A stretch of DNA of 64,000 nucleotides from Oikopleura dioica (GCA_907165135.1 OU015566.1:10974001-11038000), one strand, 5' to 3'. Positions 52-17,008 are shown, counted from the first letter of the stretch. Translations and numbers: made by a program. Notes: generated by a model not told the origin, from the letters alone.

Positions 52-3000
52 ATGGTCGGGAATGAGCAGATTCTATATGATCGAATCGTTATCCCACAAG
101 AATGGGAGAGCGAGACCACTGAGCGAAAAATTGAACCCGACAAAACGGTCCTGATATCTGTCGCAGGAACTCTAGCGCGAATCTTCTCTAATTTCAACAT
201 CTTCAGCACGTCTGATACTCTAACAGTAAGTCTTTCTTTTTGAATTCTTCAATATCAATTTTCAGCTCCCATCAACGCTAGTTAAATTCATCTCTTCCTG
301 TAACCCATGGCAAGTCTCTCGCTCTCCATGTGGCGAATTCCTCCTTATCATCCAACGAACCCATCTCGAGCTTCGATCATCCGCTGACGATTTTGAATCA
401 TGTCGACGTTGCCAAATTCCAAAGGACAAAAACCCAGAGTGGCGGAAAGTCTTTTGGTCCGGCCGAGCTTGGAACAAGGGCCAAGGCGCATTTGCGCTGA
501 CTCATTCTTCCGGGAAGATCTTTCTCTTCTCCCACGATCTTGTCATTGAAGGACGACTAGATAAACCGACGATGAACACGACTGCGGTGTTGAGCGATTC
601 GCTGGCTGGGGTTTTCTTTCCAGAAATTTATCCTGGAAGAGTTTTCGCGGTTTATCGAAATAGCGAATTCGTTGTTTTTGAGATGGATAAAAAAGGAAGA
701 TCCAGTATTGTGACCGAGGGGAGTTTAGGAGAGGGCAGCATAGTTATTGATATTTTATGACGAGTAAAGAATTATATTTATAAATAGCAATCAGAAAATT
801 CTCTCTGACCATCCATCCTTCATAAATTTAAACAAAGAGACGAAGCGAACGAAGCTTCGAATTGAAAATTCATATACTAAGCAATCCAATTCAAATTACT
901 AGCCTAGTAAAAGATCAGACATTTGGCGTTGAACATGCTATCTGGTCTGACGAGCATCAACTCCTCATCACCGTCGGAGGATCAAACGAAAGACAAGATA
1001 AGTTCTCTGGAACTGTGGCTTGGAGAATCGTTGACGATGAGACTTACGGAATTAATTTTTCCCGAGCAGCGCCGATTGTTGAAGGCTCAAAATTTTTGAC
1101 AAAAGTCGGGGGAACTCTCAGGAGTTTCTTGGGCGCAGCCGATATCCCTTGCTCGTATAATGTGTCCATATCTCCGGATCACTCAAAGGTAAGAGAAGAA
1201 GGCTTGAGTGATGATTTTGTAAACGCAAGATTACGTAAAGCTCCGTTTTGTGACAGTCATAATTGACATGTTGCTACTTATAAATGGAATAAACACTTGT
1301 TTGAAATAATTAAAATCCAATTATAAACAACGTCTGACTTTATGTAATCCAATCATTTCTTTTTTTATGCATTTTCATATATAATTATCAAAGGTGATCG
1401 TCACATCACTCGCAGGAGAGATTCTTCTCTTCTCTCTTCCCAATCTTTCACCAATTGGAAGCTGGAAGGTCGACGAATTTCCTTTTGCAAAAGAACTTCA
1501 CCCCGATCGAGCATGCTCTGTCCTTCTTGATAATGAAGTTCCCAGCGCACTCCAAACCATTCCGACGTCTATCACGTGGTGGGATGATGAGCATGTTATT
1601 TTGTCGAGGATCTGCGGGACTATTTCGATCCACTCGTTGGTTGACGATCTCGGGCTTGTTTCAGAAGTAGAGTGGGCCAGTCCATGGGCGTCCCTGTCTG
1701 ATGCCAAAGGAGGATCTGTTCTTGGACTGGAGTGCTCGATAAATGTGGAAAATAATTCAAAAGTGAGGGCTCCACGGTGACATTCTCATACCCACACTAC
1801 TAGTTATAGCAAATGCTATAAGAATTCTTATTTACTCATACACTTGGTGAAAACTTATTGACCTGATGTTTAATTTTTAAATCTGGCATCATTTTAGTAA
1901 CGGTGATAGAATAATAATTAAAGTTATTTTTCTATTTTCGGTGCGTTCATTTCATTAGCCTGTGAACAGATGATGATATTTTTATAAAGAAACATCCGTC
2001 CGTTGGATCATCTTTGCTGAATCTTACAAAGAGCTTCTTGTTCTATTTGACTGATTTGGAAGCGTTTCAGGTAAGAAAAGATTGAGTGTTTCAATAAAAA
2101 TTAAATCAATTGATTCAGGACGACAACTCTAGCTATGACATGGTAACCCGTGAATATTCCCTCTTTCGAGTCGATCGAACAACTCCTCAACAAATGTACA
2201 ATCGACTAATTGACGTAAATGACTTCCAAACAGCCCTGGCCGTGGCTGATCAGTTCGATCTGGACCCTGATCTTGTTTTTCAAAAACGCTGGGAGACGTC
2301 TGACCATGGACCTCAAGCAATTGAAGATTTCCTGAGTAGAATTCGTTGCCGAAAATACATTCTCAGCCAGATCTACTCCAAAATCCCAGCGAGTCCTGCT
2401 TCAATCATCAGTTTGCTCGAATATGGTCTCAGAGGAACTGATATCGATGTTCTGGAAAAACTCGGAAACGAAGAAAGCGATGAATTTTTTCCTTGGATTC
2501 CGGAAACAAATATCGACTACACGGAAGATGATTCCGTCGAAGATCTCGATTACAGACGAAGAGTTCTCTCAAAATTCGACTTTTCAAAGCTCAACAAAGA
2601 GCAAGTTTCCCTGCTGAAAGAAAGAATGACGATTCAGCGTTACCTTTCCCGCTTGCGAACCTTTGAAGATCTCAACCCTCGGTCACCGGATGGACCTTTC
2701 TTATCAGAACAATACAGACGATTTCGCGATGTAGATTTAATCGAGTACGCGTCACTGTGTTCAAGAAAGGGCGACGCGCGCAGCTTAGAAATCCTCTTTC
2801 GACATCATAATGAGCTTGTTCCACATCGCTTGGCACTTCTTTCGTCGTTTCCTGAAAGTTTGAGTCTTGATACGTATAAGCATCTTTTACCGAAGATCAA
2901 CCCAGCAACTTCTCAGCCGATTCCTATCAAGCATTCTGAAGCTGTTTCTTTCAATTGGTGTAATTCTGAGCTTTTGACGCGATATTTTGAAAAGCCCAAA

Positions 3001-6000
3001 TCTGGTGATTTTCTTTATGATCAATTTTTCCCATCTCTCAAACCAACAGAAGAACTAACAACAGAAGAAATCGCTGATTGGTATTGCTCCAGGGCTGAAG
3101 AGATCGAAGCAAGAACTGGTATCATTGAGCTTTCCCTTGAAATGCTCAACATCGCTGCTGAAAATTCTATCCCAAGATGTTTTCTGGATAACAAACTTGC
3201 TTCTTACAAGCTTGATTTCAAAGATCTAGCAGAGTTTGTCTATGTTTGGGAGATTCACCACGACGTCTCTCTTGCCAGCTTCAAGACTTTATCCACAAGA
3301 GCGAAAATCAACATAATTCTCAGTCGAATCAATGACCACGAAACTGATAAGGGTCTCTCGCTAATAAAAGCATTAATGGACGATGAAGAAATAAAAGAAT
3401 CAGGCTCAAGAATGACGATTTTGAAGGAAATAATCGAAAATGACGGTCTTTGGTTCACCGAACTTGTTTTGGAAAAGAAATTTTTGACAGTACAAGACGA
3501 AGTTTTCGAGCTTATCATCTTCTTAGCCTTTATGGATTCGCGGCAGATCTCACAGAAATTAGAAATGATCCTTAATCATGTTCCAGAAGAGCTAACGAAG
3601 AACCAAGAGTTCCAAATTGCCGAGATTCGTGGCATTTTAGAGTGTCAAAAGATCATCTCAAAATGGGGCGGAGCTGATTATACATTGTACGATTTGTCCG
3701 AACGCTCAAAGAGTACATCAAACAGCGTTGTCGAAAATCTCTTCAACCTTCTTGTGAATAAAACCCGTAACAACAGAGAACCAGAAAGCATCGATCAAAG
3801 GGTCTGGATTGAACTCTTTGAAGATATTCTTTCTTTGAGGAGCAAGCTTTTCCAGCGTCTTTCGATCAAATCTACGATCCAGACATTTGTTCATCACTTG
3901 CTCACCTTTGCTGGGAAAGATAACCGATACATCGGGTTCGTTGAACCGTTTTTATGCCAAACAAAATCATTTGAAAAAGATCTCGTCATCGAGGACGACT
4001 ATCTTTTATCTGAAGAGTATCCAAAGATATACATCTTGTGTTTTGAGGACTCTGCTGAGACAGTCATTCAAGCTGCAGATGATTATCTTGTGAGTGCATC
4101 GGACGTCAATGATCCTTACATTCTCACTTCTCTTCGGATTCTTAATCTCATTGACGTCGAGGAAGAATCTGGCATTTTTGATCGAGTCTCTTCAAATGTC
4201 GCTGGTCTTCAGGAACGTGATTATATAAATCTACGTTTTCTGTATTTCATTTCCCAGTATCAATCACCATGAAAGATCCTTCAATTCCTTTCCAAGAAAG
4301 GTACCAGGCTTCTACCTCACGTGATCATCAACGATGCCCGCAAAAATCCGCGAAAGCTCATGAGCGCGATTTCTACTGAATCTCCTTGGAGTCCCAACGA
4401 TGCTACGCTTTTCATTTCACTTCTGTCGAATATTTCAAAAGATCACAAAAATATTGAAGAAGAACTATTCGTTCTATCAGCACAAGAATCGCTCAAGAAT
4501 CAGTTTTGGGATTTCCTGGAAGAATTTGCATTTGAAATCGCGAATGGAAGAATTGAGAGCTACGCCGCGGCTGATTTCTGCTTTGAAGTCGGTAAAAACG
4601 CACATAGATGCGTCAAGCATCGAAATGAAATATTAATGCACGCGCTCAACTTCTGTGACGACAGCAAAATTGAAGAGATCCTGGATTTAATCGACCAGGA
4701 GGTTGATGACGAGTTGTTTACGTCTGCCGTGGATGTGTTCCAGTCTTTGATTCCTTCCGCCGCTTTGAATACGATTTCCAACACGGTAATCGGCGTCAAG
4801 CGTTTAGGTTCGTCTGGAGTCGATGACGAGGGGGCCGACGTAGAAAATTTGCCGAAGAAGAAGATCAGGCGCTCGACGATAACTGACAAAAAAGGGAATG
4901 GGTATAACCATGAATCATCAGATTTTTTCAAACCGGATATTCGCAGAAAATAATTAAATCTTTTGAAATATACCCTTTATAATAGAGAAGGAGCTATTCC
5001 TTGAAGCAATCAAAGACCTCTCAGATCCCGCTAAATTTTCAATCGCTCTTTGTTGTTACTCAGCTTCCGCGTTAGAAGAAGTTCCTGATTCCGAGGAAAC
5101 GCTCCAGTTGAAAGCGTATTTCGCAGCTGAAAGCGATCCCAAGTCAACCGAGTCGGTCTCAGATGTTATTCTCCGTAAGATTGCATATATTCCTATAATT
5201 TGTATTTCTAATAACAATTAAGGCTCCCCGGAAAACGATGAATACAAAGCGCTTGCAAAATTCATCCAGGGCGACTCATTATCCTATTATGGCGTGGATG
5301 CAGAGCAATTTGCCGCTGATCCGGAATACCGTAGAGATACGATTTTGGGGCTCGCTGAAACTGAAGATCCCGACCAATACAAGTTCGCGATGGATTTGGC
5401 TTCGGAAAATGATGTAGACACTTTTGATATGGCGATGAGTTTCTTAGAGAATGCGCTGATCAATGGAGAAGTATCAGAAATAAACATGCAGAAATACGCT
5501 GAAATGGCGAAGGATAAGCGATTCAAAGAACGACTTGAGGGATATTGCTGGAAAAATATTAAAGGAAGTGACCACGGTCGACTAGAAACCTATTTTGATC
5601 TTCGGAAGCTGTATTCATCCGACACTCTCAAAGAAGAAGAATTATTCTACGCTCTTCAATCAGTTTGCTTAGAAAGATTCGATCTGAAGAAAATACTCAA
5701 TAGTGGAATCGATTCAATCGTCGAAACATTCAAAACAGTGGAGGGAGAACCTCCTTCGCTCTTCATAGAAGTCGATCAAATTTTGAAACATTTTGAGATC
5801 TCGAGTGATAAGATCTTCGCGAGGAGAATGTTAAAGAAATACATTCAAGAAGGATTTATCGCTGAAGATTTGTTGGAACTCAGAAATTATTTGGGAGACG
5901 ATGAATATGTAGTCAGATGTTTCATGGAAGTAGTCAGCAACAATCTCAAAACTGAAGATTTGGAAAATGAGATGTTTTTCGCAAAAGACTTCATTATGAA

Positions 6001-9000
6001 TCTTTTATTGGAAGATGAGTGGATACGAGAAAGAAGTGAGAAGCTAAAAACACTCCTCAACACTCCCAGTGATTATGACGTGTCGGATTTAATTAAACCG
6101 TATCTTGATGGATCTGACGTAACTGATGTTCTACTCTCAAAATTCAACTGGCAGAAAGATTATCTCGAGCTCACATCCCATTTCAGCTGTGACGTTGAAA
6201 ATATTGTTGGTAACCTTGTAAAAACGTCACTACACGGCCCAGTAGAGCTTGAAGAACTCGCGCATATTCTCAGGTAGTTTTATAGCAGAAGATATAGATC
6301 GCTCAATTTTAGATGCGATTGAATCTTTTTCCTTTGATTGAATTATTTATTCTCATTTGAAGGTCTGACGAAGCACTTTTCACGACCTCCGTTTGCCGTA
6401 AATTTTCTGAAAAAGCTCCGAAGATCGAACTCTTCTTGTCCGCCTGCTCCAAACTTCAACATCTTTTTTCGTCCCTTTCCGACCCCGAGTCCCTTCTACT
6501 CTCGTACATTGATGAATTTGAATCGTGCCCATCGTCAAATGAAATAATTATCTCCAAAAATATCCAACAAGCAGAAGAGATCAAGTCCCTCGTCAATGAC
6601 GATAACTCGGATCGATTTGGTTGTGTAGTCGCACGATGTTCCTTCTTTATCCGCTTCCATGAGTATTTATTGACAGTCAATTTGGAAGACTCCTCGAATA
6701 CTATTGGGGAAAATATCAATCAAAAACTGGCATTTGTTTATGACAAAATTGATGGTTATAAATATGACGAGCTGAATAAATACCTGTCTTTTAAACTAGA
6801 GTCAGTACCTTCTGAAGCGGAGCGAATCTCGAAGAATAAAGCTCTGGTGGAAAGCCTCAAAGATCTAGATGAAATTGTAGATGCAAAAAAGCTCATCGAA
6901 GGAGAAGGCATCTCTAATCTGGTGGATCTAACCTTGTCCTCGGTTTACATCATTGATGACTCTGTTGAAGTTCTTGATTTGTACTCTCCTGATCATTTTG
7001 TGAAACAATGGGCGCAAGAAAAAGGAACGACCATTTCGCCGGGTGATATCAAAAGGCTGGTTGAGCACTTGGATCAGGAAACTAGAATCGATATCGCAAA
7101 AGATCTCGCCGTGAAAAGCGAAGTAGACATTGACTCAGCAGACAGCATCAAGAAGCACATTTTTACGCTAAAAATCTGTTATCATTTGTCCGAAGACACC
7201 GAGAGTGCTCAAGATTTCAGAGCTCAAGGAAAGAATCTATCACTTTTCCTGCAAGAGCCCCTCTGTTACTACCATTTGCAAGCAAAAAAGACGATTTATG
7301 CCACCATCGATTGTGAAGAAAAGCTTTTGGCCGCTCTCCGAAGTCTCAAAGACTCTGAAAAATGGCTCGATTTACTCAATCAACTATCGTCTTTCATCTC
7401 GGAAGTGAGCTTGGCGACTCTCGTACGGCCAGAAATAGCCTCTTCATTATCTTCAAAGGGAGATTTTTTCCATCAACTTTCTGCTTTCAAAGAAGCTGGC
7501 TTCAGCAAGTCTGAAGTTTCTTCTTGGATTGCCTCGACCTTTGAAAATGATACACCGGCAGTGGAAGTTTTTATATCAGCCTGCGTAGGAATACCAGAAC
7601 TACTTCAAATGGTTCCGGAAAAGCGTAAAAATCAGCTGATAGATGGCTTCACGGATAATCTTGTTCAGCGTGAAATCAAGGATGAGATTACATTTCATCG
7701 TGACCTGGCTCTCGCGAAATCTTTGCTGGAACAAATTTGTCCTGCTAAGAAAGGAAAAGTTTCTATTCTTTATGAATAATTTTAAAATAACCATCGTATC
7801 GATATTTAAATTCCTAGGAGTGTTCAACTCAGCACGATAATTATTTGATAAAACAAGAGCAATGGTGTATTTCTCATAATTATTTTCATATCAAAACTTA
7901 TTAAAGAGCTTCAAAAACTCGTGTTTATCATGGATCTGCTGTCGACTATTCTTGCCGATGACGACAACGCCCATATTTCTGAAGTAAATTCTTTAAAAAC
8001 AAGCTTCATCGATGGTCAGCCAAGTCTTGAAAATATTGCGAAACTGGCAAAATTCTGTAGTGCGTCTCAATGGATTGAGTTTGTGAAAGAAGTAATTTCT
8101 GAGAACGAAGATCTTTCTTTGAAAATTATTATTCATTACGTCGTGAAGGTGAACATTGAAAATTTACAGGAAAGCGATTGAAAGCTTTTAATTATCTTTT
8201 TTTTTGTACTTTGTATACAGGAATTCCCGTACGTATATCGGTTTTACTGATCGCATCTCAGGAACTTAGTAAACTCCTCGATGGTTTATCGCTTATCAAC
8301 TCATCTTTTGAAGAAGACAAAAAGATGAAAGAATTGATCAACACTGGTCTCGCCCGTTCTATCGAGATCAAGACCTACGAGCTTGATATTTACTTGTTCG
8401 TTCTTCAGAAGTTCCCTATAGCACTTGAATGCGTTGAAGATTACTCAGTTTACGATACCATGATTTCGATGATTCAAAATCCACCTGACTTGACTTCGAA
8501 CTCAACGACGCAAGCGCTGGAAAATCTTCAAAAGCTGAAGAAAGTCTTAAAACGCGCTGGCAGACCACTCGATATTGTTTCCAAGTGGATAAATATTTTC
8601 CGCCTTTTATCATCTGATCCAATGCAAGACTTGCTCTTTATCAATTGTTGCGTCGTCGAAGAGATCTTTGAAAGGTTTTTGGCGAATGAATCCGTCCTTG
8701 ATCTGATTCTAAAACAGAGAGAAACTCTCGAGGAGCAAGATTATTGGGACAGTGTTGTGTCTCTCCTGGTGGAAATTGATCGTGATTATGAAACTTCTTT
8801 CAATGCCGAAGAAAGTCCTGAGCAACCAGAGATTTCTATCTGCTTACCAAAACTTGAAATGACAGAGGTAAACAATGAAGAAGAGGAAGGATGGAATGAG
8901 GACGACAGCGATCTCGACCTTCCTGACGATGATGAGATGTTGGAGGGTCAGGAAGAGGACTTCGAAGAAAAGGATAAATCTTATCATGAAATGGAAACGG

Positions 9001-11111
9001 CTGATGCTGTTCCATTAGATCAAGAAGTTGACCTGAATGTGGAACACCAAAATATCGCAGCGGAATGCGAATCATCAAAACGAATATCCGAAGAAGAGGA
9101 AGACGAGAATGAGGGGTGGAACAACGGCGAAGAAAGTGATCTCGATTTACCAGATGAGAACGAAGAACTCCCGGAGTCTGAAATAAATCTCGCAGAAGAG
9201 AGATCAGAGGGAGAAAGTCAAGCACCATCAGATGAAAAAGAATCTGAAAACGTCCAAGAAAGGCTGCCTTCGGAAGAGAATGATCAATCTAAAGAAGTAA
9301 TACCAGAAGAAAATCAGTCAACAGGGCGACCGGATTGGAATGAAGATGAGAGCGATATCGAGCTTCCTTCAGATCACGAAGATGATCAAACTCCACCTCT
9401 ATCGGACTTGCAAACTGAAAATGTCGTAGCTTTTCAAGATGATGCCACGGAAAATCAGGAGCATCCAGCTTGCCATGAAGAGGACCAAAATCTTCCTGTT
9501 TCCACTGAAGACGAAAAGTTGACAGAGAAAACTGGATGGGAAAACGAGGAAAGAAACATCGATCTTCCTTCGGATAAGAAGAGTGAGCATCACTCACTTT
9601 TGCCAGAAGACCCTGTTCAGATGAAATCAGACATCCAGGATGAAACCAAGGAGATTGAGCCCATGGATAAGCCAAGCAGTGATAAATATTGCAATAAAGA
9701 TCAAGATGAATCAAGTACTGAAGACGTTCCAATGACTGATGATCAAGAGGCTGTTGAGTCAGAAACTGGCTGGGCGAATGAAGAGAGTGATATCGATCTA
9801 CCATCCGATTCTGAGGTCGGGGAAATTACAGATAGCCTTCCCGAAACTGTCCCTGTCTCCTCAGACTTTTCTTCCGTGCCAGTTATGGAAATTGTCGAAA
9901 GATCAGCATCTGAGGTCTCCTCTGAGAATGCTGGTTGGAATAATAATGAAAGTGATCTCGAGATCCCTTCTGATTCCGAGGATGAATCTCAAGCTACTAT
10001 TCCGGACACTCTGATAGACGAACTCCCAGTAACGAAGTCTGAACAGCCTCCTAAAGATAGCGAAGTTGATCTCCCATCAGATGATGTACAAGATGAGCAC
10101 GACGCGAGTATATGCATAGATGAAAAATCCGCTGTCACAGAGGATCAGCTACCCGTGAAAACAAATGACCGCCCATCAATCACTCCCGTATCTGATTCAA
10201 GCTCCAACCAAGGGTGGGACAACGAAGAAAGCGATCTAGATCTTCCATCTGATGACGAAGATGAGTGTCAGAGTCCTCGTGAAGCCGAAATCGTCAGCAA
10301 AACTGATGACATCAAAGATGAAGAAAAGTCTGGTTGGGATAATGACGAAGAAAGCGACCTGGATCTACCGTCTGGTGATGAAGGCGACTCTCAAATTGCT
10401 TTAGCAGAAGCACCAGTTATTGGAAACGCGCATTCCGAGATATTATCACAAAGTTTGGTGTCAGCCGAAAGAGATGACGTTGAAAAAGAAGGCTGGCAAC
10501 ATGACGACGAAAGCGATCTGGATCTCCCATCAGATTCAGATGTTGATGACGGAGGGCCTGAAGTTAAATCGCCAAGTCCTGAAGGCTGGGGCGAAGACGG
10601 CAGCGATTTGGATCTCGGGTCAAATGAGCCTCCCTCCCCTTCACCTGATGATAATAAATCTCCAGAGCCAGAAGGATGGAATCAAGAAAATGACCTCGAT
10701 CTTGATGAAGACAATTCAGATGAGGAAAATGAGGGTTGGGAAGATGATGATTTGGATATTGAAGACGATGAAGTGGAAGAGCAACAAAATACCCAAGACT
10801 TGGAAGGACTTATTGTAAGATATCACAGTGCTTTGAGAAATCCTGACTCAGAACAAGATGTTAAAGGACTTCTTACAGGGATGGTTTTCGATAATGATAT
10901 TTTATATTTTTATAGCCCAGACAGAACTATCATCGGCAATAAATTATAATTTATGACATCTAATCGAAAACATCAATAAGCACTCCGAGACAATGGTGAA
11001 TTTCAAAAGGCGTCTATACTTATTCTACGGTTACGAAACACACACCCTGCTTTTCTGAACCAATCTGCTCTCCGTGCTGCTGATATTTGGGAACAAGACA
11101 TGGATCTTTAA
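52..11111 (+). CDS. NBAS: NBAS/Sec39 (NRZ tethering complex subunit), multi-exon
   Basis: The N-terminus EQILYDRIVIPQEWESET and exon 2 LPSTLVKF...ELRSSADDF...CQIPKDKNPEWRKVFW match the vertebrate NBAS N-terminus. DAEQFAADPEYRRDTILGLAET at 5297 is a conserved NBAS motif. The last exon FQKASILILRLRNTHPAF...SALRAADIW matches the NBAS C-terminus; stop at 11109-11111. Confidence 0.93.
8880..10770 (+). repeat. Coding array of acidic Trp motifs GW-x(3-5)-(S)DLDLP(SD) within NBAS
   Basis: ORF 8178..10949 contains 12 Trp-bearing copies (e.g. EGWNEDDSDLDLPDD, TGWANEESDIDLPSD, QGWDNEESDLDLPSD, EGWEDDDLDIEDD) and one Trp-less copy (DSEVDLPSDD). Confidence 0.95.
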
Positions 11112-11245
11112 AAATACTGTAGAAATTTTTAACACTGTGCAATATTTAAAAATGCTAAACCTGCAATTTTTTTTGGTGACGCTGAACTGATAAAATATTT
11201 AATAATAAACAATCCAAAATTCCAAATGCACCTGTTTTTAGAAAC

Positions 11246-12372
11246 ATGGCGACAGAAGGTCTCAAAATAGCTCTTAATTCGCTCATACTGATACTAGAAA
11301 ATAGTATCGATGAATTTCCCCGTGGGCAACTTTCTCCGGAGCTTTTACGGCAAGCAAAGACTGATAATTTTTCCGTTCTAAAGGTATACTAATTTCCCAT
11401 TATATTGAATGTCCATTAAACTTCTAGCCATTTACGCAAATTCTTGAGCAAATTTCGCAGTTCCTGACAAAGAAAAATCTCAAGAGACTTACTGACGAAA
11501 TGAGCGTCGCGGAGCCCGATTGGAATTCACCGTCCGCGCTTTTGACGCTTTTTGCAATCATAAGTAACCCGTCCTTTGTTATTCAAGTTTTGAAATTCTT
11601 TTAGTTCATAAATTCAATATTGTGGAAGAGGCTTTCCGATTCTCGTCAAATACGTCAGATGCACTCAAGCGGGCAGTTGTTATTGAATCGAATAAGAAAC
11701 GTACTACTAATGTAACGAATCCTACACCCGATTCGGTTCTTTTTACCGTCGGGAAGATACGAAAATTGGCGGCAATGCTTGACGCCTCACAATATCCACC
11801 ACTTCCGCAGAATTTAAGGTTAGTCGATGTCGTATTTTTTAGATAAAATAACAATGATAGTCATTTATCATACGAAGAATTTATCCTTTCCCAAACCCCA
11901 AAAGCGGTTGAAAAACTCGACCAAACTCTTTCGAAGGGACTGATCGTTGTCAAAAATTATTTCATTTGGAAGGAAAGAGAGGATTATTTCTGGGCCTGGA
12001 TCATGCAATCCGTCAACTACGATCACTTCAATCGCTCAACTTTCGCTGGAAATCCACGAGTACATGACGATGCTAAGTTCCAGTGGGCAAGGTAATCATC
12101 AGACTATTTTTTAAACTCAAGCAATTTTCAGGACAGAAAAGCTTTTAGGTGCATTTGAAAAGGTACCAGCGCCGAAGTTCAAACCAGATCGACTAAAAGC
12201 CACAACGCAATTGAGCCTTGCCATGTCTCTCCAACTCAGCAAGGCATCAAATCAAATCCCAACATCTTCAAAAAAGCTTCAAGACGAAATTCAGCAACTT
12301 GAAAAAGATGCACAAAAAGTGCTAAATCAGAAAGTCAAAAAACTGCCCAAAGATATCATTCCTGTTTTTTAA
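11246..12372 (+). CDS. TEDC1: Tubulin epsilon and delta complex protein 1-like (C14orf80/DUF4509), 5 exons
   Basis: Hand-spliced: LSPELLRQAKTDN resembles TEDC1 PSPEIFRRAKFDR. HLSYEEFIL...YFIWKEREDYFWAWIMQSV resembles HLSFLETHL...LAWRRSELVFWRWMDTV. ATG at 11246, 4 nt after a tttttag acceptor. Confidence 0.62.
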
Positions 12373-12437
12373 GATCTGTTAATTCAATAAACTATTTTAT
12401 TTTTAAAAACTTTATTTTGAATAGCCTCAGATAATCA

Positions 12438-13930: not shown

Positions 13931-15188
13931 TTATGCCTCTTCGAATCCACAAAAGGAAACCGCGATGGCGTTGTAGAAAGGATCCTGGAGGTATGGGTCG
14001 AGGAATTCAGCGGCTAGGCTAGTCCAGGCTTCGACTTCACCTCCAAACTGTGATATATGTTGAAAGTGCTCGTAAAAATATCGGGTCCAGTAGCTATAGA
14101 ATGTGTCGGTGAAAGTCTGTCCCCAGATAGCTTCAGCAACTGAATTTATTGTCAGCCTAAAAATTGACAAGATATTTCTTACTGTATCTCTCGCTGATCT
14201 CTGCCACCTGGAAGAGAACATCAAAATGGTAGAGGACTCTATAGAAATTGCGCATCATCTGGTGGGCCAAGCCGAAGGGGCCGACCTTTTTAAGACAAGC
14301 GTTTCTGAGTGGCTCCTTGTAGACGATTGTATCCTTAGATCAGATAAAAAGAGCTGGAAGATATTTTTAACTCACAATATTAAGGATCTCGTTGTAGTAT
14401 CTCTCTCCTAATTTCCATGCCTCCATCTCATTCTCATAAACGTAGAGGCCTGCCTCGATAAATTCCCAGGCGAGTTGGGCGTAGTCGATGAGCTGCTCGA
14501 CGGTGTTTCGGCCGTTGCTTATTCCAGCGTTGTATTGCTTGAAAGCTGATCGAAGCGCTCTCATGGAGTTCAAGTATGCGTTAGAAGCCTTCAAATTTGA
14601 GTGGAAATTGATTATTTTGATTGATTCTTACGTCGTTGAAGTCAGTCTGCGCTTCAAAAGCAGTAGCGGCGTCTTGGGCATTCTGGAAATGTTTGTCAGC
14701 AACACTTGTCATGAGAGCGCCAAGATCAACTCCATCAAAGTTTCCAACTGGGAAATTGATGAAGTAGTTAGACATCTCAGTTCGAGAGAAAGTGATGCCA
14801 CTCATGCAGCCAGCGAGGGATGCATAGAGGTCCTGGGTGTTTTGGTCGTTGGCGACTCGGGTTTTAAAGTTGTCGATGTTGGTGTAAAGAGCGTTGTTGT
14901 TGGTGGTAGTGCTGATGCCGGTGAAAGTGGCAGTCATGCAGGAAGCAACGGCAAAGTCGTCGATGTACTCGAGAAACGAGAAACCTGTGTTCTCAGTAAC
15001 GAGATCTGGCCATCCATAGTCCTTGAAAAGCTCGCGAACCATGTTAGCGGCACCATCTTATGAGTCTGTTTGACTGTGGTTGTTGTATAAATCTTACCTT
15101 GGAAGTCCAAATGTAGCACAGCATTGTTGTACGTTGGGGACCTATTGGCCGAGGCAAGAGTGGCCAACGCAGTAGTAGAAATCTTCGT
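13931..15188 (-). CDS. Orphan secreted protein, tandem copy A (start codon is ACG; possibly a pseudogene)
   Basis: Exons are collinear with copy B (ORFs 14581..15042, 14367..14594, 13931..14224). The signal-peptide exon begins ACG AAG ATT TCT where copy B has ATG AAG CTC TCT. Confidence 0.65.
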
Positions 15189-15752: not shown

Positions 15753-17008
15753 TTACGCTTCTTCGAATCCGCAGACGGATACCGCGATGGTGTTGTAGAA
15801 CGTATCTTGGAGGTAGGGGTCGAGGAAGGTGGCAGCAAGGTTAGTCCAGGCTTCGACTTCACCACCGTACTGGGAGAAATCGTAGAAGTACTGGTAGAAG
15901 TACTGGCTCCAGTAGTTGTGGAAAGTTTCGGTAAAAGTCTGTCCCCAGATGGCTTCAGCGACTGAAAAATCGTTAGGTGACACAATTTTTTAAAGCTCTT
16001 ACTGTATCGTTCGCTGAGTTCAGCCCACTGGAAGAGAACATCAGCATGGTAGAGGATGCTGAAAAAATTGACCATCATCTGGTGAACCATTCCAAAGGGA
16101 CCGACCTTCTGGAGGCAAGCGTTGATGAGTGGCTGTTTGTAGACGATAGTATCCTAGATCATATTTAATAGAGATCAAAAGAAGTTTTTGCATACAATAT
16201 TGATGATCTCATCGTAAAGTCTCTCTCCGAATTGCCATGCTTCCATCTCATTTTCATAAACATAAAGACCGGCCTCGATGAACTCCCAGGCGAGCTGGGC
16301 GTAGTCGGTGAGCTGCTCAGCGGTGTTTCGGCTGTTGCTGATTCCAGAGTTGTATTGCTTGAAAGCTGATCGGAGAGCTCGCATGGAGTTCAAGTATGCA
16401 TTAGAAGCCTTGAAATAGGAATGAAAATTTGTAATTTTGATCAACTCTTACGTTGGTGTAGTCAGTCTGCGCCTCATAAGCAGTAGCGGCATCTTGAGCA
16501 CTCTGGAAATGTTTGTCAGCAACACTTGTCATGAGAGCGCCAAGATCAACTCCATCAAAGTTTCCAACTGGGAAATTGATGAAGTAGTTAGACATCTCAG
16601 TTCGGGAGAAAGTGATGCCACTCATGCAGCCCGCGAGGGACGCGTAGAGGTCCTGAGTGTTTCGGTCGTTGGCAACTCGGGTCTTGAAGTTGTCGATGTT
16701 GGTGTAGAGAGCGTTATTGTCGGTGGTAGTGCTGATGCCGGTAAAGGTGGAGGTCATGCAGTAAGCAACGTTGAAGTCGTTGATGTTTTCAAGGAAAGAG
16801 AAGCCAGTGTTCTCGGTGACAAGATCTGGCCATCCGTAATCCTTGAAAAGCTCGCGAACCATGTTAGCAGCGCCATCTTTTGAGCTAGTTAGATATTTGT
16901 TGAGGTTGAAGTCTTACCGTGGAAGTCCAAATGCAAGAGAGCATTATTGTAGGTTGCGGACATCTGGGCCGAAGCAACAGCAGCCATGGCGGCGGTAGAG
17001 AGCTTCAT
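15753..17008 (-). CDS. Orphan secreted protein, tandem copy B
   Basis: MKLSTAAMAAVASAQ signal-peptide-like start at 17008; exons from ORFs 16401..16862, 16175..16444 and 15753..15983 ending CGFEEA*. Confidence 0.78.

What the first reader, a model, noticed from the sequence alone, without database searches (positions are those of the whole stretch)
8880..10770. NBAS carries a giant acidic tryptophan-motif array: a candidate expanded COPI-capturing lasso
Seen: a ~630-aa acidic, low-complexity insert lies between the helical body of NBAS and its conserved final helices (LRNTHPAF...ALRAA). It holds 12 copies of GW-x(3-5)-(S)DLDLP(SD), spaced about 20-80 aa apart. Known: acidic singleton-Trp motifs in the yeast Dsl1 lasso and in the alpha-COP linker (human GGWDVEEDLELPPE) bind the alpha-COP C-terminal region in COPI tethering and coat stability. 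I do not recall vertebrate NBAS having such an array. Inference: this lineage has built a highly multivalent COPI-catching or uncoating tether on the NBAS subunit, possibly suited to very high secretory flux.
Basis: partly seen in the sequence, partly recalled or inferred. Interest (0 to 1): 0.87.

Follow-up and report, generated by a model that had tools for sequence, protein, structure and literature searches.

The report
Tryptophan-motif lasso in larvacean NBAS
In this larvacean tunicate, NBAS (an ER vesicle-docking subunit) carries a ~650-residue floppy acidic loop with 12 conserved tryptophan motifs shaped like the peptide that COPI coat subunit alpha-COP uses to bind itself, so it may be the COPI-catching "lasso" that animal docking complexes seem to lack.

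Summary
Observation confirmed. One 2.66-kb exon (8221-10878, +) of an NBAS/Sec39 gene encodes a ~650-aa acidic segment with no predicted secondary structure. It holds 12 copies of G-W-x(3-6)-[DN][LI][DE][LI]-(P-S-D); 0.04 are expected by chance.

The motifs are old and under selection. In three diverged Oikopleura-type lineages, motif columns are 57% invariant, spacers 15% and the helical body 61%. Silent sites differ at about 55% of conserved residues.

The loop replaces a 4-residue inter-helix turn just before the conserved NBAS C-terminal hairpin, so it is a true lasso.

The motif pattern exactly fits the mammalian alpha-COP self-binding tryptophan motif (GGGWDVEEDLELPP, residues 877-890, read from PDB chains). 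No di-Trp, kinesin-light-chain, clathrin-box or LIR pattern is present.

No array was found in 20 named animal NBAS (vertebrates, amphioxus, urchin, molluscs, most arthropods). The array is not unique, however. An unnamed chelicerate-like clade has 5-8 similar motifs, chytrids have 1-3, and every land-plant homologue sampled carries a W-x-x-x-W-E acidic core.

Best reading (0.55): a multivalent COPI-capturing or uncoating loop on NBAS. Binding is untested. No paper linking NBAS to such motifs was found.

The parts
52..11111 (+). NBAS (Sec39-family, NRZ/Dsl1 tethering-complex subunit) gene, many short introns; roughly 3,200 codons by summing the ORF blocks
   Evidence: Collinear tblastn to turtle, amphioxus and urchin NBAS at 260-724, 1394-1774, 2143-4683, 5252-5602 and 10983-11090. 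The N-terminal ORF at 52-243 starts with the ILY..W motif typical of NBAS N-termini. Collinear with the O. dioica scaffold FN653176.1 gene at 38-92% aa identity.
2110..4272 (+). Large exon (ORF limits) encoding the Sec39 domain
   Evidence: Pfam PF08314 Sec39 E 3.6e-10. phmmer found 191 proteins at E<=1e-10; the best full-length hit is Terrapene NBAS.
8174..8220 (+). Inferred 47-nt intron with GC..AG ends, in front of the array exon
   Evidence: Frame change between ORF 7921-8181 and ORF 8178-10949, a poly-T tract followed by TATACAG acceptor, and the same exon layout in L003. Inferred; no read spans it.
8221..10878 (+). Array-bearing exon (886 codons): helical body, then acidic loop, then one helix
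   Evidence: Uninterrupted reading frame. A single exon in the annotated O. dioica model, with a 728-codon common prefix. AF2 secondary structure gives helices at ORF residues 1-208 and 865-900 and coil at 209-864.
8802..10769 (+). Acidic loop of ~656 residues with no predicted secondary structure (the 'lasso'), net charge about -190
   Evidence: Composition. No secondary structure in the AF2 model, which has low pLDDT throughout. Spacers are 15% invariant with many indels across three lineages.
8889..8930 (+). Motif 1 GWNEDDSDLDLPDD
   Evidence: invariant G-W and SDLDLP in all three lineages
9114..9158 (+). Motif 2 GWNNGEESDLDLPDE
   Evidence: the Trp is lost in the O. dioica reference but the DLDLP tail is kept
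9333..9374 (+). Motif 3 DWNEDESDIELPSD (only copy with D before W; lies in a lineage-specific insertion)
9534..9575 (+). Motif 4 GWENEERNIDLPSD
9768..9809 (+). Motif 5 GWANEESDIDLPSD
   Evidence: absent in the O. dioica reference
9933..9974 (+). Motif 6 GWNNNESDLEIPSD
10050..10082 (+). Trp-less half-site PKDSEVDLPSD; not conserved in the relatives
10212..10253 (+). Motif 7 GWDNEESDLDLPSD
10332..10376 (+). Motif 8 GWDNDEESDLDLPSG
   Evidence: covered by a 100%-identical 164-nt contig (10275-10438) of an oligo-dT marine metatranscriptome
10491..10535 (+). Motif 9 GWQHDDESDLDLPSD
10584..10625 (+). Motif 10 GWGEDGSDLDLGSN
   Evidence: compare the upstream alpha-COP site EGWGEDAELQLDED at 841-856
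10674..10712 (+). Motif 11 GWNQENDLDLDED
10734..10769 (+). Motif 12 GWEDDDLDIEDD
10879..10980 (+). Inferred last intron (102 nt, non-canonical GG..AG)
   Evidence: Joining ..KGLLT to ALRDNGEF.. restores the NBAS C-terminus. The same codon position has a GA..AG intron in L003 and in the annotated O. dioica model, whose protein reads KGLIS|ALRNKGEF.
10981..11111 (+). Last exon: conserved NBAS C-terminal hairpin (..GEFQKASILILRLRNTHPAF..ALRAA..), stop codon at 11109-11111
   Evidence: tblastn to the final 37 residues of urchin NBAS (E 0.013) and turtle NBAS. The ..AG..EAGSLL..THPAL/F.. pattern is shared with about 25 animal NBAS.

Best explanation
The acidic loop is a multivalent COPI-coat-binding 'lasso' carried by the NBAS subunit of the ER-resident NRZ (Dsl1-type) tethering complex. 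Each of the 12 motifs is a singleton-tryptophan motif: G-W, a few acidic residues, then D-L-D-L-P. [quoted passage not shown] The proposed steps are as follows. NBAS is held at the ER through the complex's SNARE contacts. The ~650-residue loop is anchored at both ends in the terminal helical domain and sweeps a large volume. Several motifs at once engage alpha-COP C-terminal domains on an incoming Golgi-derived COPI vesicle, which gives avidity. Because the motifs imitate alpha-COP's own inter-subunit contact, they may also compete with it and loosen the coat before fusion. Shown here: the motifs, their number, their selection, the lack of predicted structure, the loop topology, the pattern match to alpha-COP's motif, and the absence of rival motif patterns. 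Inferred: the binding itself, the site bound, the position of the loop in the complex, and the effects on capture and uncoating.
For: (1) There are 12 motifs against 0.04 expected, and every Trp is paired with a DLDL-type tail.
(2) Purifying selection acts on the motifs. Three-lineage invariance is 57% in motif columns, 15% in spacers and 61% in the folded body. Window versus L003 aa identity is 69%, 32% and 66% respectively, while about 55% of conserved residues use a different codon everywhere.
(3) The context looks disordered: 35% D+E and no secondary structure over residues 209-864 in AF2.
(4) The loop replaces a 4-residue, confidently predicted turn (block pLDDT 88) between the last helices of turtle NBAS, so its two ends are adjacent.
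[quoted passage not shown] The alpha-COP C-terminal domain has a binding site for the singleton tryptophan motif, used for COPA homo-oligomerisation and ER tethering (PMC10866661).
(6) A single motif from an NBAS homologue (P0191), searched against 177,635 PDB sequences, returned alpha-COP as 3 of 4 hits, aligned on GGGWDVEEDLELPP at 877-890; the top hit was 6tzt_B. The pattern GW-x(2-6)-[DN][LI][DE][LI], derived only from the window, matches that alpha-COP peptide exactly, including the following Pro. The motif profile scores it 7.4 bits, reached by 35 of 5,000 shuffles.
(7) NBAS homologues of other lineages whose Dsl1/ZW10 is reported to lack a lasso (PMC4868844) also carry Trp-acidic motifs in the C-terminal extension: a WDEGWE-type core in every land-plant homologue sampled (Juncus has the variant WDNDGWE), GWxxDGWD and GW..DLDL in chytrids, and 5-8 SGWD[IV][DE][DE]DL[DE]L in a chelicerate-like clade.
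(8) Rival motif patterns are absent.
Against: No binding data of any kind exist. The similarity to alpha-COP's motif is that of a short linear motif. The E-values are weak (2-9), and the window's own motifs 1, 8 and 10, the whole array and the 31-instance profile did not retrieve alpha-COP from the PDB. The profile score of 7.4 bits is far below the array's own 19-46 bits, and the second alpha-COP site does not stand out. The position of the NBAS C-terminal domain in the NRZ complex is unknown, so 'membrane-distal' is an assumption carried over from yeast Sec39. The conserved S-D-L-D-L-P-S-D tail is more stereotyped than 'any acidic flank', which could mean a different or additional partner. 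Neither this organism's alpha-COP, ZW10 and RINT1 nor other tunicates could be examined. The cross-family survey has no control set of unrelated long proteins.
Confidence: 0.55

Rival explanations
1. The motifs are a real short-linear-motif array but recruit a partner unrelated to COPI. Candidates are Trp-pocket proteins of the GW182/Argonaute/CNOT9 type (NBAS also acts in ER-localised nonsense-mediated decay), SUMO, or another trafficking adaptor.
For: Eleven G-W dipeptides in a disordered region resemble GW-repeat 'hooks' in outline. NBAS has a documented second role in NMD (PMC7397857 listed; PMC4206994). The stereotyped SDLDLPSD tail is not required by the published description 'acidic sequence with a single Trp'. 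Direct PDB searches with the window's motifs gave no alpha-COP hit.
Against: The Trp is embedded in strongly acidic sequence, not G/S/N-rich neutral sequence. The tail is as conserved as the G-W, which fits a bipartite groove-binding motif of about 14 residues. The kinesin-light-chain W-acidic, clathrin-box, LIR and di-Trp patterns are all absent. The only structurally characterised peptide found with the same bipartite shape is alpha-COP's own. The NBAS family repeatedly carries Dsl1-type di-Trp motifs in other lineages.
Confidence: 0.25
2. The loop is mainly a charged spacer, entropic bristle or phospho-regulated acidic domain. On this view the repeated unit is kept for CK2-type phosphorylation or for charge patterning, not for docking to a partner.
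For: Net charge is about -190. 31 of 78 Ser fit S-x-x-[DE]. The spacers evolve freely in length and sequence.
Against: A bristle or a CK2 substrate does not need an invariant Trp and two invariant Leu/Ile at fixed spacing. Trp is the commonest aromatic residue in the segment, and each one is conserved across lineages that differ at about 55% of silent positions.
Confidence: 0.12
3. The segment is not part of the mature NBAS protein, because it is an intron, a retained sequence or an annotation or assembly artefact.
For: RNA runs labelled as the same species laid almost no reads (90-95% alike, none in the array), so no read spans the exon junctions. The flanking introns have non-canonical GC..AG and GG..AG ends.
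Against: The frame is open for 923 codons. Conservation is at the amino-acid level with synonymous divergence. An oligo-dT metatranscriptome contig at 10275-10438 is 100% identical. The annotated O. dioica model has the array as one exon and uses the same last junction. The junction is conserved in three lineages, with G*-AG ends in each.
Confidence: 0.03

Closest known systems
Dsl1 'lasso' of the yeast Dsl1 complex (111-residue disordered acidic loop, Dsl1 residues 378-488)
   Same: A disordered, acidic loop inserted into a helical domain of an ER tethering-complex subunit. It carries Trp motifs in acidic context that bind COPI, including a singleton-Trp motif for alpha-COP.
   Different: It sits on a different subunit (NBAS/Sec39 homologue, not Dsl1/ZW10). 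It is about 6 times longer, with 12 singleton motifs instead of one singleton plus one di-Trp, and has no di-Trp motif. It has a stereotyped DLDLP tail.
Internal singleton tryptophan motif of alpha-COP (mammalian residues 877-890, GGGWDVEEDLELPP; PDB 6tzt, 5a1u, 9qpq)
   Same: The bipartite shape is the same: G-W, four mostly acidic residues, D-L-[DE]-L-P. It fits the pattern derived from the window's 12 copies exactly. The motif is known to bind the alpha-COP C-terminal domain.
   Different: There is one copy in the coat subunit itself (possibly two; a second, weaker site lies at 841-856), against 12 on a tether. The array consensus has Ser before DLDL and P-S-D after it. The profile similarity is modest (7.4 bits).
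delta-COP MHD di-tryptophan motif (ELM LIG_deltaCOP1_diTrp_1; Dsl1, Gcs1, ArfGAP1)
   Same: A Trp-based, acid-flanked COPI ligand used by tethers and ArfGAPs. This type does occur on plant, chytrid, braconid wasp and other NBAS homologues.
   Different: The window's array has no second Trp or Phe within 6 residues of any Trp.
Canonical animal NBAS (vertebrates, amphioxus, sea urchin, molluscs, most arthropods)
   Same: The same gene, with beta-propeller region, Sec39 domain, C-terminal extension and terminal hairpin.
   Different: These have a 4-8-residue turn where the larvacean has ~650 residues. They have no array.
GW182/TNRC6 GW-repeat Argonaute hooks
   Same: Many G-W dipeptides scattered through a long disordered region.
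   Different: The context here is strongly acidic and each Trp has a conserved hydrophobic-acidic tail. No link to Argonaute was tested or is known for NBAS.

Membership tests
NBAS / Sec39 subunit of the NRZ (Dsl1) tethering complex | Central Sec39 domain | tested here: met
   Pfam PF08314 E 3.6e-10 on 2110-4272; 191 homologues at E<=1e-10, with the best full-length ones named NBAS.
NBAS / Sec39 subunit of the NRZ (Dsl1) tethering complex | N-terminal beta-propeller region (Nbas_N) upstream of Sec39, in collinear order | tested here: met
   tblastn hits at 266-460 (E 1.8e-14) and 1394-1774 (E 1e-6) to NBAS residues 48-113 and 310-437. The collinear O. dioica model carries Pfam Nbas_N. Pfam did not hit the window's short exons individually.
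NBAS / Sec39 subunit of the NRZ (Dsl1) tethering complex | Conserved C-terminal hairpin (..AG..EAGSLL..R.THPAL/F..AL..) | tested here: met
   The last exon at 10981-11111 matches the final 37 residues of animal NBAS.
NBAS / Sec39 subunit of the NRZ (Dsl1) tethering complex | Assembly with ZW10, RINT1 and the SNARE Use1/p31 | not testable with these tools
   The partners are not in the window and no interaction data exist.
Singleton tryptophan motif (alpha-COP C-terminal-domain ligand) | Flexible, acidic sequence containing a single Trp | tested here: met
   12 Trp, each in an acidic stretch; no second Trp or Phe within 6 residues; coil over residues 209-864 in the AF2 model.
Singleton tryptophan motif (alpha-COP C-terminal-domain ligand) | Sequence likeness to a structurally defined instance | tested here: met
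   The array-derived pattern matches alpha-COP 877-890 exactly. Profile score is 7.4 bits, reached by 0.7% of shuffles. This is weak as statistics, and the window's own motifs did not retrieve alpha-COP by phmmer.
Singleton tryptophan motif (alpha-COP C-terminal-domain ligand) | Binds the motif pocket of the alpha-COP C-terminal domain | not testable with these tools
   No multimer prediction or binding assay is available here.
delta-COP MHD di-tryptophan motif | W-x(1-6)-[WF] in acidic context | tested here: not met
   No match in the loop; the closest Trp-Trp spacing is 20 residues.
Dsl1 lasso | Loop inserted in the Dsl1/ZW10 subunit | tested here: not met
   The loop is in NBAS. It works like a lasso but is not the Dsl1 lasso.
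Dsl1 lasso | Long disordered acidic loop whose ends are held together by a folded domain | tested here: met
   The insertion point corresponds to a 4-residue turn between two helices in a confident model of turtle NBAS (mean pLDDT 85.5). The loop itself is coil.
Kinesin light chain W-acidic motif / clathrin box / LIR | [LMIVT][DE]W[DE]; L[LIVMF]x[LIVMF][DE]; acidic-[WFY]xx[LIV] | tested here: not met
   No match involves any of the 12 Trp.
GW182-type Argonaute hook | GW/WG repeats in a disordered, mostly neutral G/S/N-rich context that bind Ago or CNOT9 Trp pockets | tested here: inconclusive
   G-W is present 11 times, but in a context of 35% D+E with a conserved DLDLP tail. Binding is not testable.

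The most novel reading that the evidence does not exclude
The COPI-capturing element of lasso-less Dsl1/NRZ complexes lies in general on the C-terminal extension of NBAS. Trp-acidic COPI ligands would then have been gained repeatedly on NBAS: a W-x-x-x-W-E acidic core in land plants, di-Trp and GW..DLDL motifs in chytrids, di-Trp in braconid wasps, singleton arrays in a chelicerate-like clade, and the 12-copy array in larvaceans. This would answer the long-standing question of how ZW10-type complexes without the Dsl1 acidic loop catch COPI vesicles. The larvacean array, which mimics alpha-COP's own coat contact, would act as an uncoating device as well as a tether.
Probability: 0.3. Interest if true: 0.85.

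Novelty: new variant of a known kind. Interest (0 to 1): 0.68.

Why it matters
Reviews state that Dsl1 homologues of aquatic fungi, plants and metazoans all lack the COPI-binding lasso (PMC4868844). They also say that how ZW10 tethers without it, and what the long C-terminal extension of NBAS does, are open questions (PMC4206994). A conserved, 12-fold array of alpha-COP-like tryptophan motifs in that extension gives a concrete, testable candidate for the missing COPI-binding site. Related motifs on the NBAS homologues of plants, chytrids and some arthropods support the same idea. The array is also a natural high-valency reagent for studying coat capture and uncoating. NBAS is a human disease gene (liver failure, SOPH syndrome), so a defined function for its C-terminal region would be of wider interest, although vertebrates themselves lack the array. 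In the public O. dioica annotation the gene is split and the array-bearing part is an 'unnamed protein product'. That may explain why it has gone unnoticed.

Tried and rejected
- **RNA evidence.** The only same-species-label RNA runs laid a handful of reads at 90-95% identity and none in the array, so they appear to come from a diverged lineage. Only one 164-nt metatranscriptome contig supports transcription.
- **PDB sequence searches.** The whole array, motifs 1, 8 and 10, a P0092 motif and the 31-instance profile gave nothing relevant. Only the P0191 motif found alpha-COP.
- **Pfam.** No family for the array, its flanks, P0182 or P0183.
- **ESM Atlas by features.** Best score was 0.65, which is uninformative.
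- **Metagenome scan.** One short locus (L004) covering only motif 1.
- **Literature.** No paper holds Dsl1+lasso+NBAS. Other term sets for NBAS or MIP2 with COPI, tryptophan or acidic motifs, and for an NRZ structure, surfaced nothing relevant among the papers listed. The alpha-COP peptide string was not found in text. Travis et al. 2019, Suckling et al. 2015 and Schmitt 2010 are not held, so I cannot exclude that one of them mentions NBAS motifs.
- **Other tunicates.** None appeared among named hits, so whether the array is confined to larvaceans within tunicates is open.
- **A single ancestral motif in vertebrates.** Tetrapod NBAS has a conserved G-x-W-D-x-E-E-[LIM] at the same loop. In the turtle model that Trp sits in a tight, confident 4-residue turn, so I treat it as probably structural.
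- I dropped them and did not send them elsewhere.
- **Our own earlier findings.** A word search returned nothing on coatomer, ZW10 or NBAS in this genome.

Full report
**What is there**

The + strand of window 52-11111 encodes a very long NBAS (Sec39-family) protein in many exons separated by tiny introns.

- The exon at 2110-4272 hits Pfam Sec39 (E 3.6e-10).
- A search of 1.8 billion representative proteins finds 191 homologues at E<=1e-10. The best full-length ones are named NBAS: Terrapene, Branchiostoma, Strongylocentrotus, Haliotis, Argonauta and others.
- tblastn of turtle, amphioxus and urchin NBAS onto the window is collinear from residue ~48 to the very last residues.
- The array lies in one ORF, 8178-10949.
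- From reading-frame changes, splice signals and two related loci, I place the exon at 8221-10878. A 47-nt GC..AG intron precedes it and a 102-nt GG..AG intron follows it.
- The last exon (10981-11111) encodes the conserved NBAS C-terminal hairpin.

**The observation**

All 12 Trp of the acidic segment sit in the same unit. The consensus is x-E-x-x-G-W-x-x-E-E-S-D-L-D-L-P-S-D. The 12 [DN][LI][DE][LI] tetrapeptides of the segment pair one-to-one with the 12 Trp.

- Shuffling the 640 residues 20,000 times gives a mean of 0.04 such W-tail pairs and never more than 2.
- The segment is 35% Asp+Glu, with a net charge of about -190.
- AlphaFold2 on a shallow three-sequence alignment shows helices at ORF residues 1-208 and 865-900 and no secondary structure in between. 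Confidence is low throughout, so this only agrees with disorder and does not prove it.
- There is no tandem repeat at the DNA level. The motif-coding stretches are 60-85% identical and use different synonymous codons. The copies are therefore old.

**Is it coding and conserved?**

A protein search with the ORF finds two relatives. P0182 comes from a marine metagenome contig (locus L003). P0183 is an 'unnamed protein product' of the Oikopleura dioica reference genome.

The O. dioica scaffold is collinear with the window over the whole gene. Identity falls along the gene: 85-92% in the propeller exons, 81% in the Sec39 exon, 47-70% in the C-terminal extension and about 40% in the array exon. The window therefore comes from a diverged lineage or sister species of O. 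dioica. This agrees with the earlier scan note s1-336578 and with RNA runs of the same species label being only 90-95% alike.

- In the three-way alignment, G-W and S-D-L-D-L-P are invariant at most sites, while the spacers are full of substitutions and indels.
- Motif columns are 57% invariant, spacers 15% and the helical body 61%.
- Between the window and L003, amino-acid identity is 69% in motifs, 32% in spacers and 66% in the body. More than half of the conserved residues use different codons in all three classes.
- P0182 has 11 motifs. The O. dioica reference has about 9.
- The annotated O. dioica model has the array as a single exon and splices ..KGLIS|ALRNKGEF.. through a GA..AG intron, at the same codon as in the window and L003.
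- A 164-nt contig from an oligo-dT marine metatranscriptome matches 10275-10438 perfectly.

Together this makes an intron or artefact very unlikely. Even so, no read here spans the exon junctions.

**Where the loop sits**

A confident model of the last 380 residues of turtle NBAS (mean pLDDT 85.5, 22-sequence alignment) shows an all-helical domain. The position equivalent to the insertion is a 4-residue turn (G-H-W-D) between two helices, just before the terminal hairpin. The ~650-residue larvacean loop therefore leaves and re-enters the fold at nearly the same point. This is a literal lasso, like the Dsl1 lasso, which is an insertion into Dsl1 domain C.

**What the motif resembles**

[quoted passage not shown] A COPA paper describes the singleton-tryptophan-motif binding site on the alpha-COP C-terminal domain and its role in COPA homo-oligomerisation and ER tethering.

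I could not read the primary paper, so I looked for the alpha-COP sequence in the PDB. A 31-residue piece around one motif of the NBAS homologue P0191 was searched against all 177,635 distinct PDB sequences.

- Alpha-COP made up three of the four hits, aligned on GGGWDVEEDLELPP. This lies at residues 877-890 of full-length chains 9qpq_D and 5a1u_C, and at residues 9-28 of 6tzt_B, a construct that joins this motif to the C-terminal domain.
- A weaker second site, EGWGEDAELQLDED, lies at 841-856.
- The pattern derived solely from the window's copies, GW-x(2-6)-[DN][LI][DE][LI], matches that peptide exactly, and a Pro follows as in the array.
- A profile of 31 larvacean motif instances scores it at 7.4 bits, reached by 0.7% of its shuffles. 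The second site does not stand out.

The E-values (2-9) are weak, as expected for a short motif. The window's own motifs did not retrieve alpha-COP. I treat this as 'same shape', not homology. Patterns for the delta-COP di-Trp motif, the kinesin-light-chain W-acidic motif, the clathrin box and LIRs are absent from the Trp sites.

**How general is it?**

No array was found in any of these NBAS sequences: turtle, bird, snake, axolotl, three mammals, amphioxus, sea urchin, abalone, a snail, an octopod, a bryozoan, a soft coral, horseshoe crabs, a scorpion, a cockroach, a damselfly, a millipede and a crab.

The larvacean array is nevertheless not alone.

- An unnamed clade (P0092, P0190, P0191, P0042) has 5-8 copies of SGWD[IV][DE][DE]DL[DE]L in the same C-terminal region. 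Its nearest named relatives are chelicerate NBAS at 35-36% identity.
- A springtail has one copy.
- Chytrid fungi have GW..DLDL singletons and GWxxDGWD di-Trp motifs: Powellomyces, Borealophlyctis, Phlyctochytrium, Dinochytrium, Fimicolochytrium and others.
- Braconid wasps have GWDDNW.
- Another unnamed clade (P0036, P0037) has several W-x-D-W motifs and ends in GW[QD]DW.
- Every land-plant homologue sampled, from liverworts to orchids, has an acidic W-[DG]-E-G-W-E core, or a close variant such as WDNDGWE in Juncus.

These motifs sit at different places in the extension and are of different types, which points to repeated gain. A review notes that Dsl1 homologues of aquatic fungi, plants and metazoans all lack the lasso. 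Another calls ZW10's tethering without the acidic region, and the role of NBAS's C-terminal extension, open questions. I found no paper linking NBAS to such motifs, but three key papers were not readable. The survey has no control protein set.

**Mechanism and verdict**

The most likely reading (0.55) is a multivalent COPI-binding loop on NBAS. Many weak singleton-Trp contacts with alpha-COP C-terminal domains would capture COPI vesicles at the ER. Because the motifs imitate alpha-COP's own inter-subunit contact, they may also promote uncoating.

Rivals are another Trp-pocket partner (0.25), a charged or phospho-regulated spacer (0.12) and an untranslated segment (0.03). The link to the animal's heavy secretion is speculation.

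I class this as a new variant of a known kind: a Dsl1-type lasso, moved to another subunit and expanded 12-fold. It also points to a broader, testable hypothesis about where lasso-less tethering complexes bind COPI.

Noticed in passing
window 8174-8220 and 10879-10980; L003 about 5369-5488; L005 about 12185-12289: The introns flanking the array exon appear to have non-canonical ends: GC..AG (47 nt) and GG..AG (102 nt). The orthologous last intron is GA..AG in two related lineages, so the donor dinucleotide differs between lineages at the same codon.
   Followed up: partly
L005 (O. dioica scaffold FN653176.1), 689-5624, 5625-10000 and 10001-12418: The public O. dioica annotation splits NBAS. 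A 1361-aa model carries Nbas_N and Sec39. About 4.4 kb is left unannotated although it is clearly coding (47-70% aa identity to window exons). The array-bearing part is a 772-aa 'unnamed protein product'.
   Followed up: yes
P0050, P0063, P0086, P0089, P0100, P0112, P0145, P0206, P0207 (land-plant NBAS/MIP2 homologues), about 280 residues from the C-terminus: A conserved acidic multi-Trp motif, W-x(3-4)-W-[DG]-E-G-W-E-x-[FL], is present from liverworts and a lycophyte to monocots and eudicots. It fits the delta-COP di-Trp ligand shape.
   Followed up: partly
P0036, P0037 (locus L002, metagenome scaffold of a compact, intron-poor eukaryote): These NBAS-like proteins have several acidic W-x-D-W motifs (GGWDDWG, SWNDWT, EEWQDWDD) and a C-terminus ending GW[QD]DW. 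The organism is unknown.
   Followed up: no
P0002 residue 2312 and the equivalent in P0197, P0198, P0200, P0208-P0210: Tetrapod NBAS has a conserved G-x-W-D-x-E-E-[LIM] exactly at the loop where the larvacean array is inserted; in a bird it reads GGWDVEE, the same seven residues as in alpha-COP 878-884. In the turtle model the Trp lies in a tight, confident turn, so it may be structural and not a ligand.
   Followed up: partly
window 8836-9228 and 9289-9804, minus strand: The long antisense ORFs (130 and 171 aa) opposite the array are most likely by-products of the GAN-rich coding strand, not genes.
   Followed up: no
window 13931-14224 and 15753-15983, minus strand: Two paralogous ORFs share ..EAIWGQTFT.TF..YW..YFY..GGEVEAWT.LAA.FLDPYLQD.FYN.IAVS.CGFEEA. 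They have no Pfam family and look like a tandemly duplicated gene of unknown function.
   Followed up: partly
window 6300-11600 versus RNA runs X5-X7: RNA-seq runs carrying the same species label match the window at only 90-95%. NBAS protein identity to the O. dioica reference ranges from 92% (propeller) to about 40% (array exon). Both fit deeply diverged cryptic lineages under one species name.
   Followed up: partly
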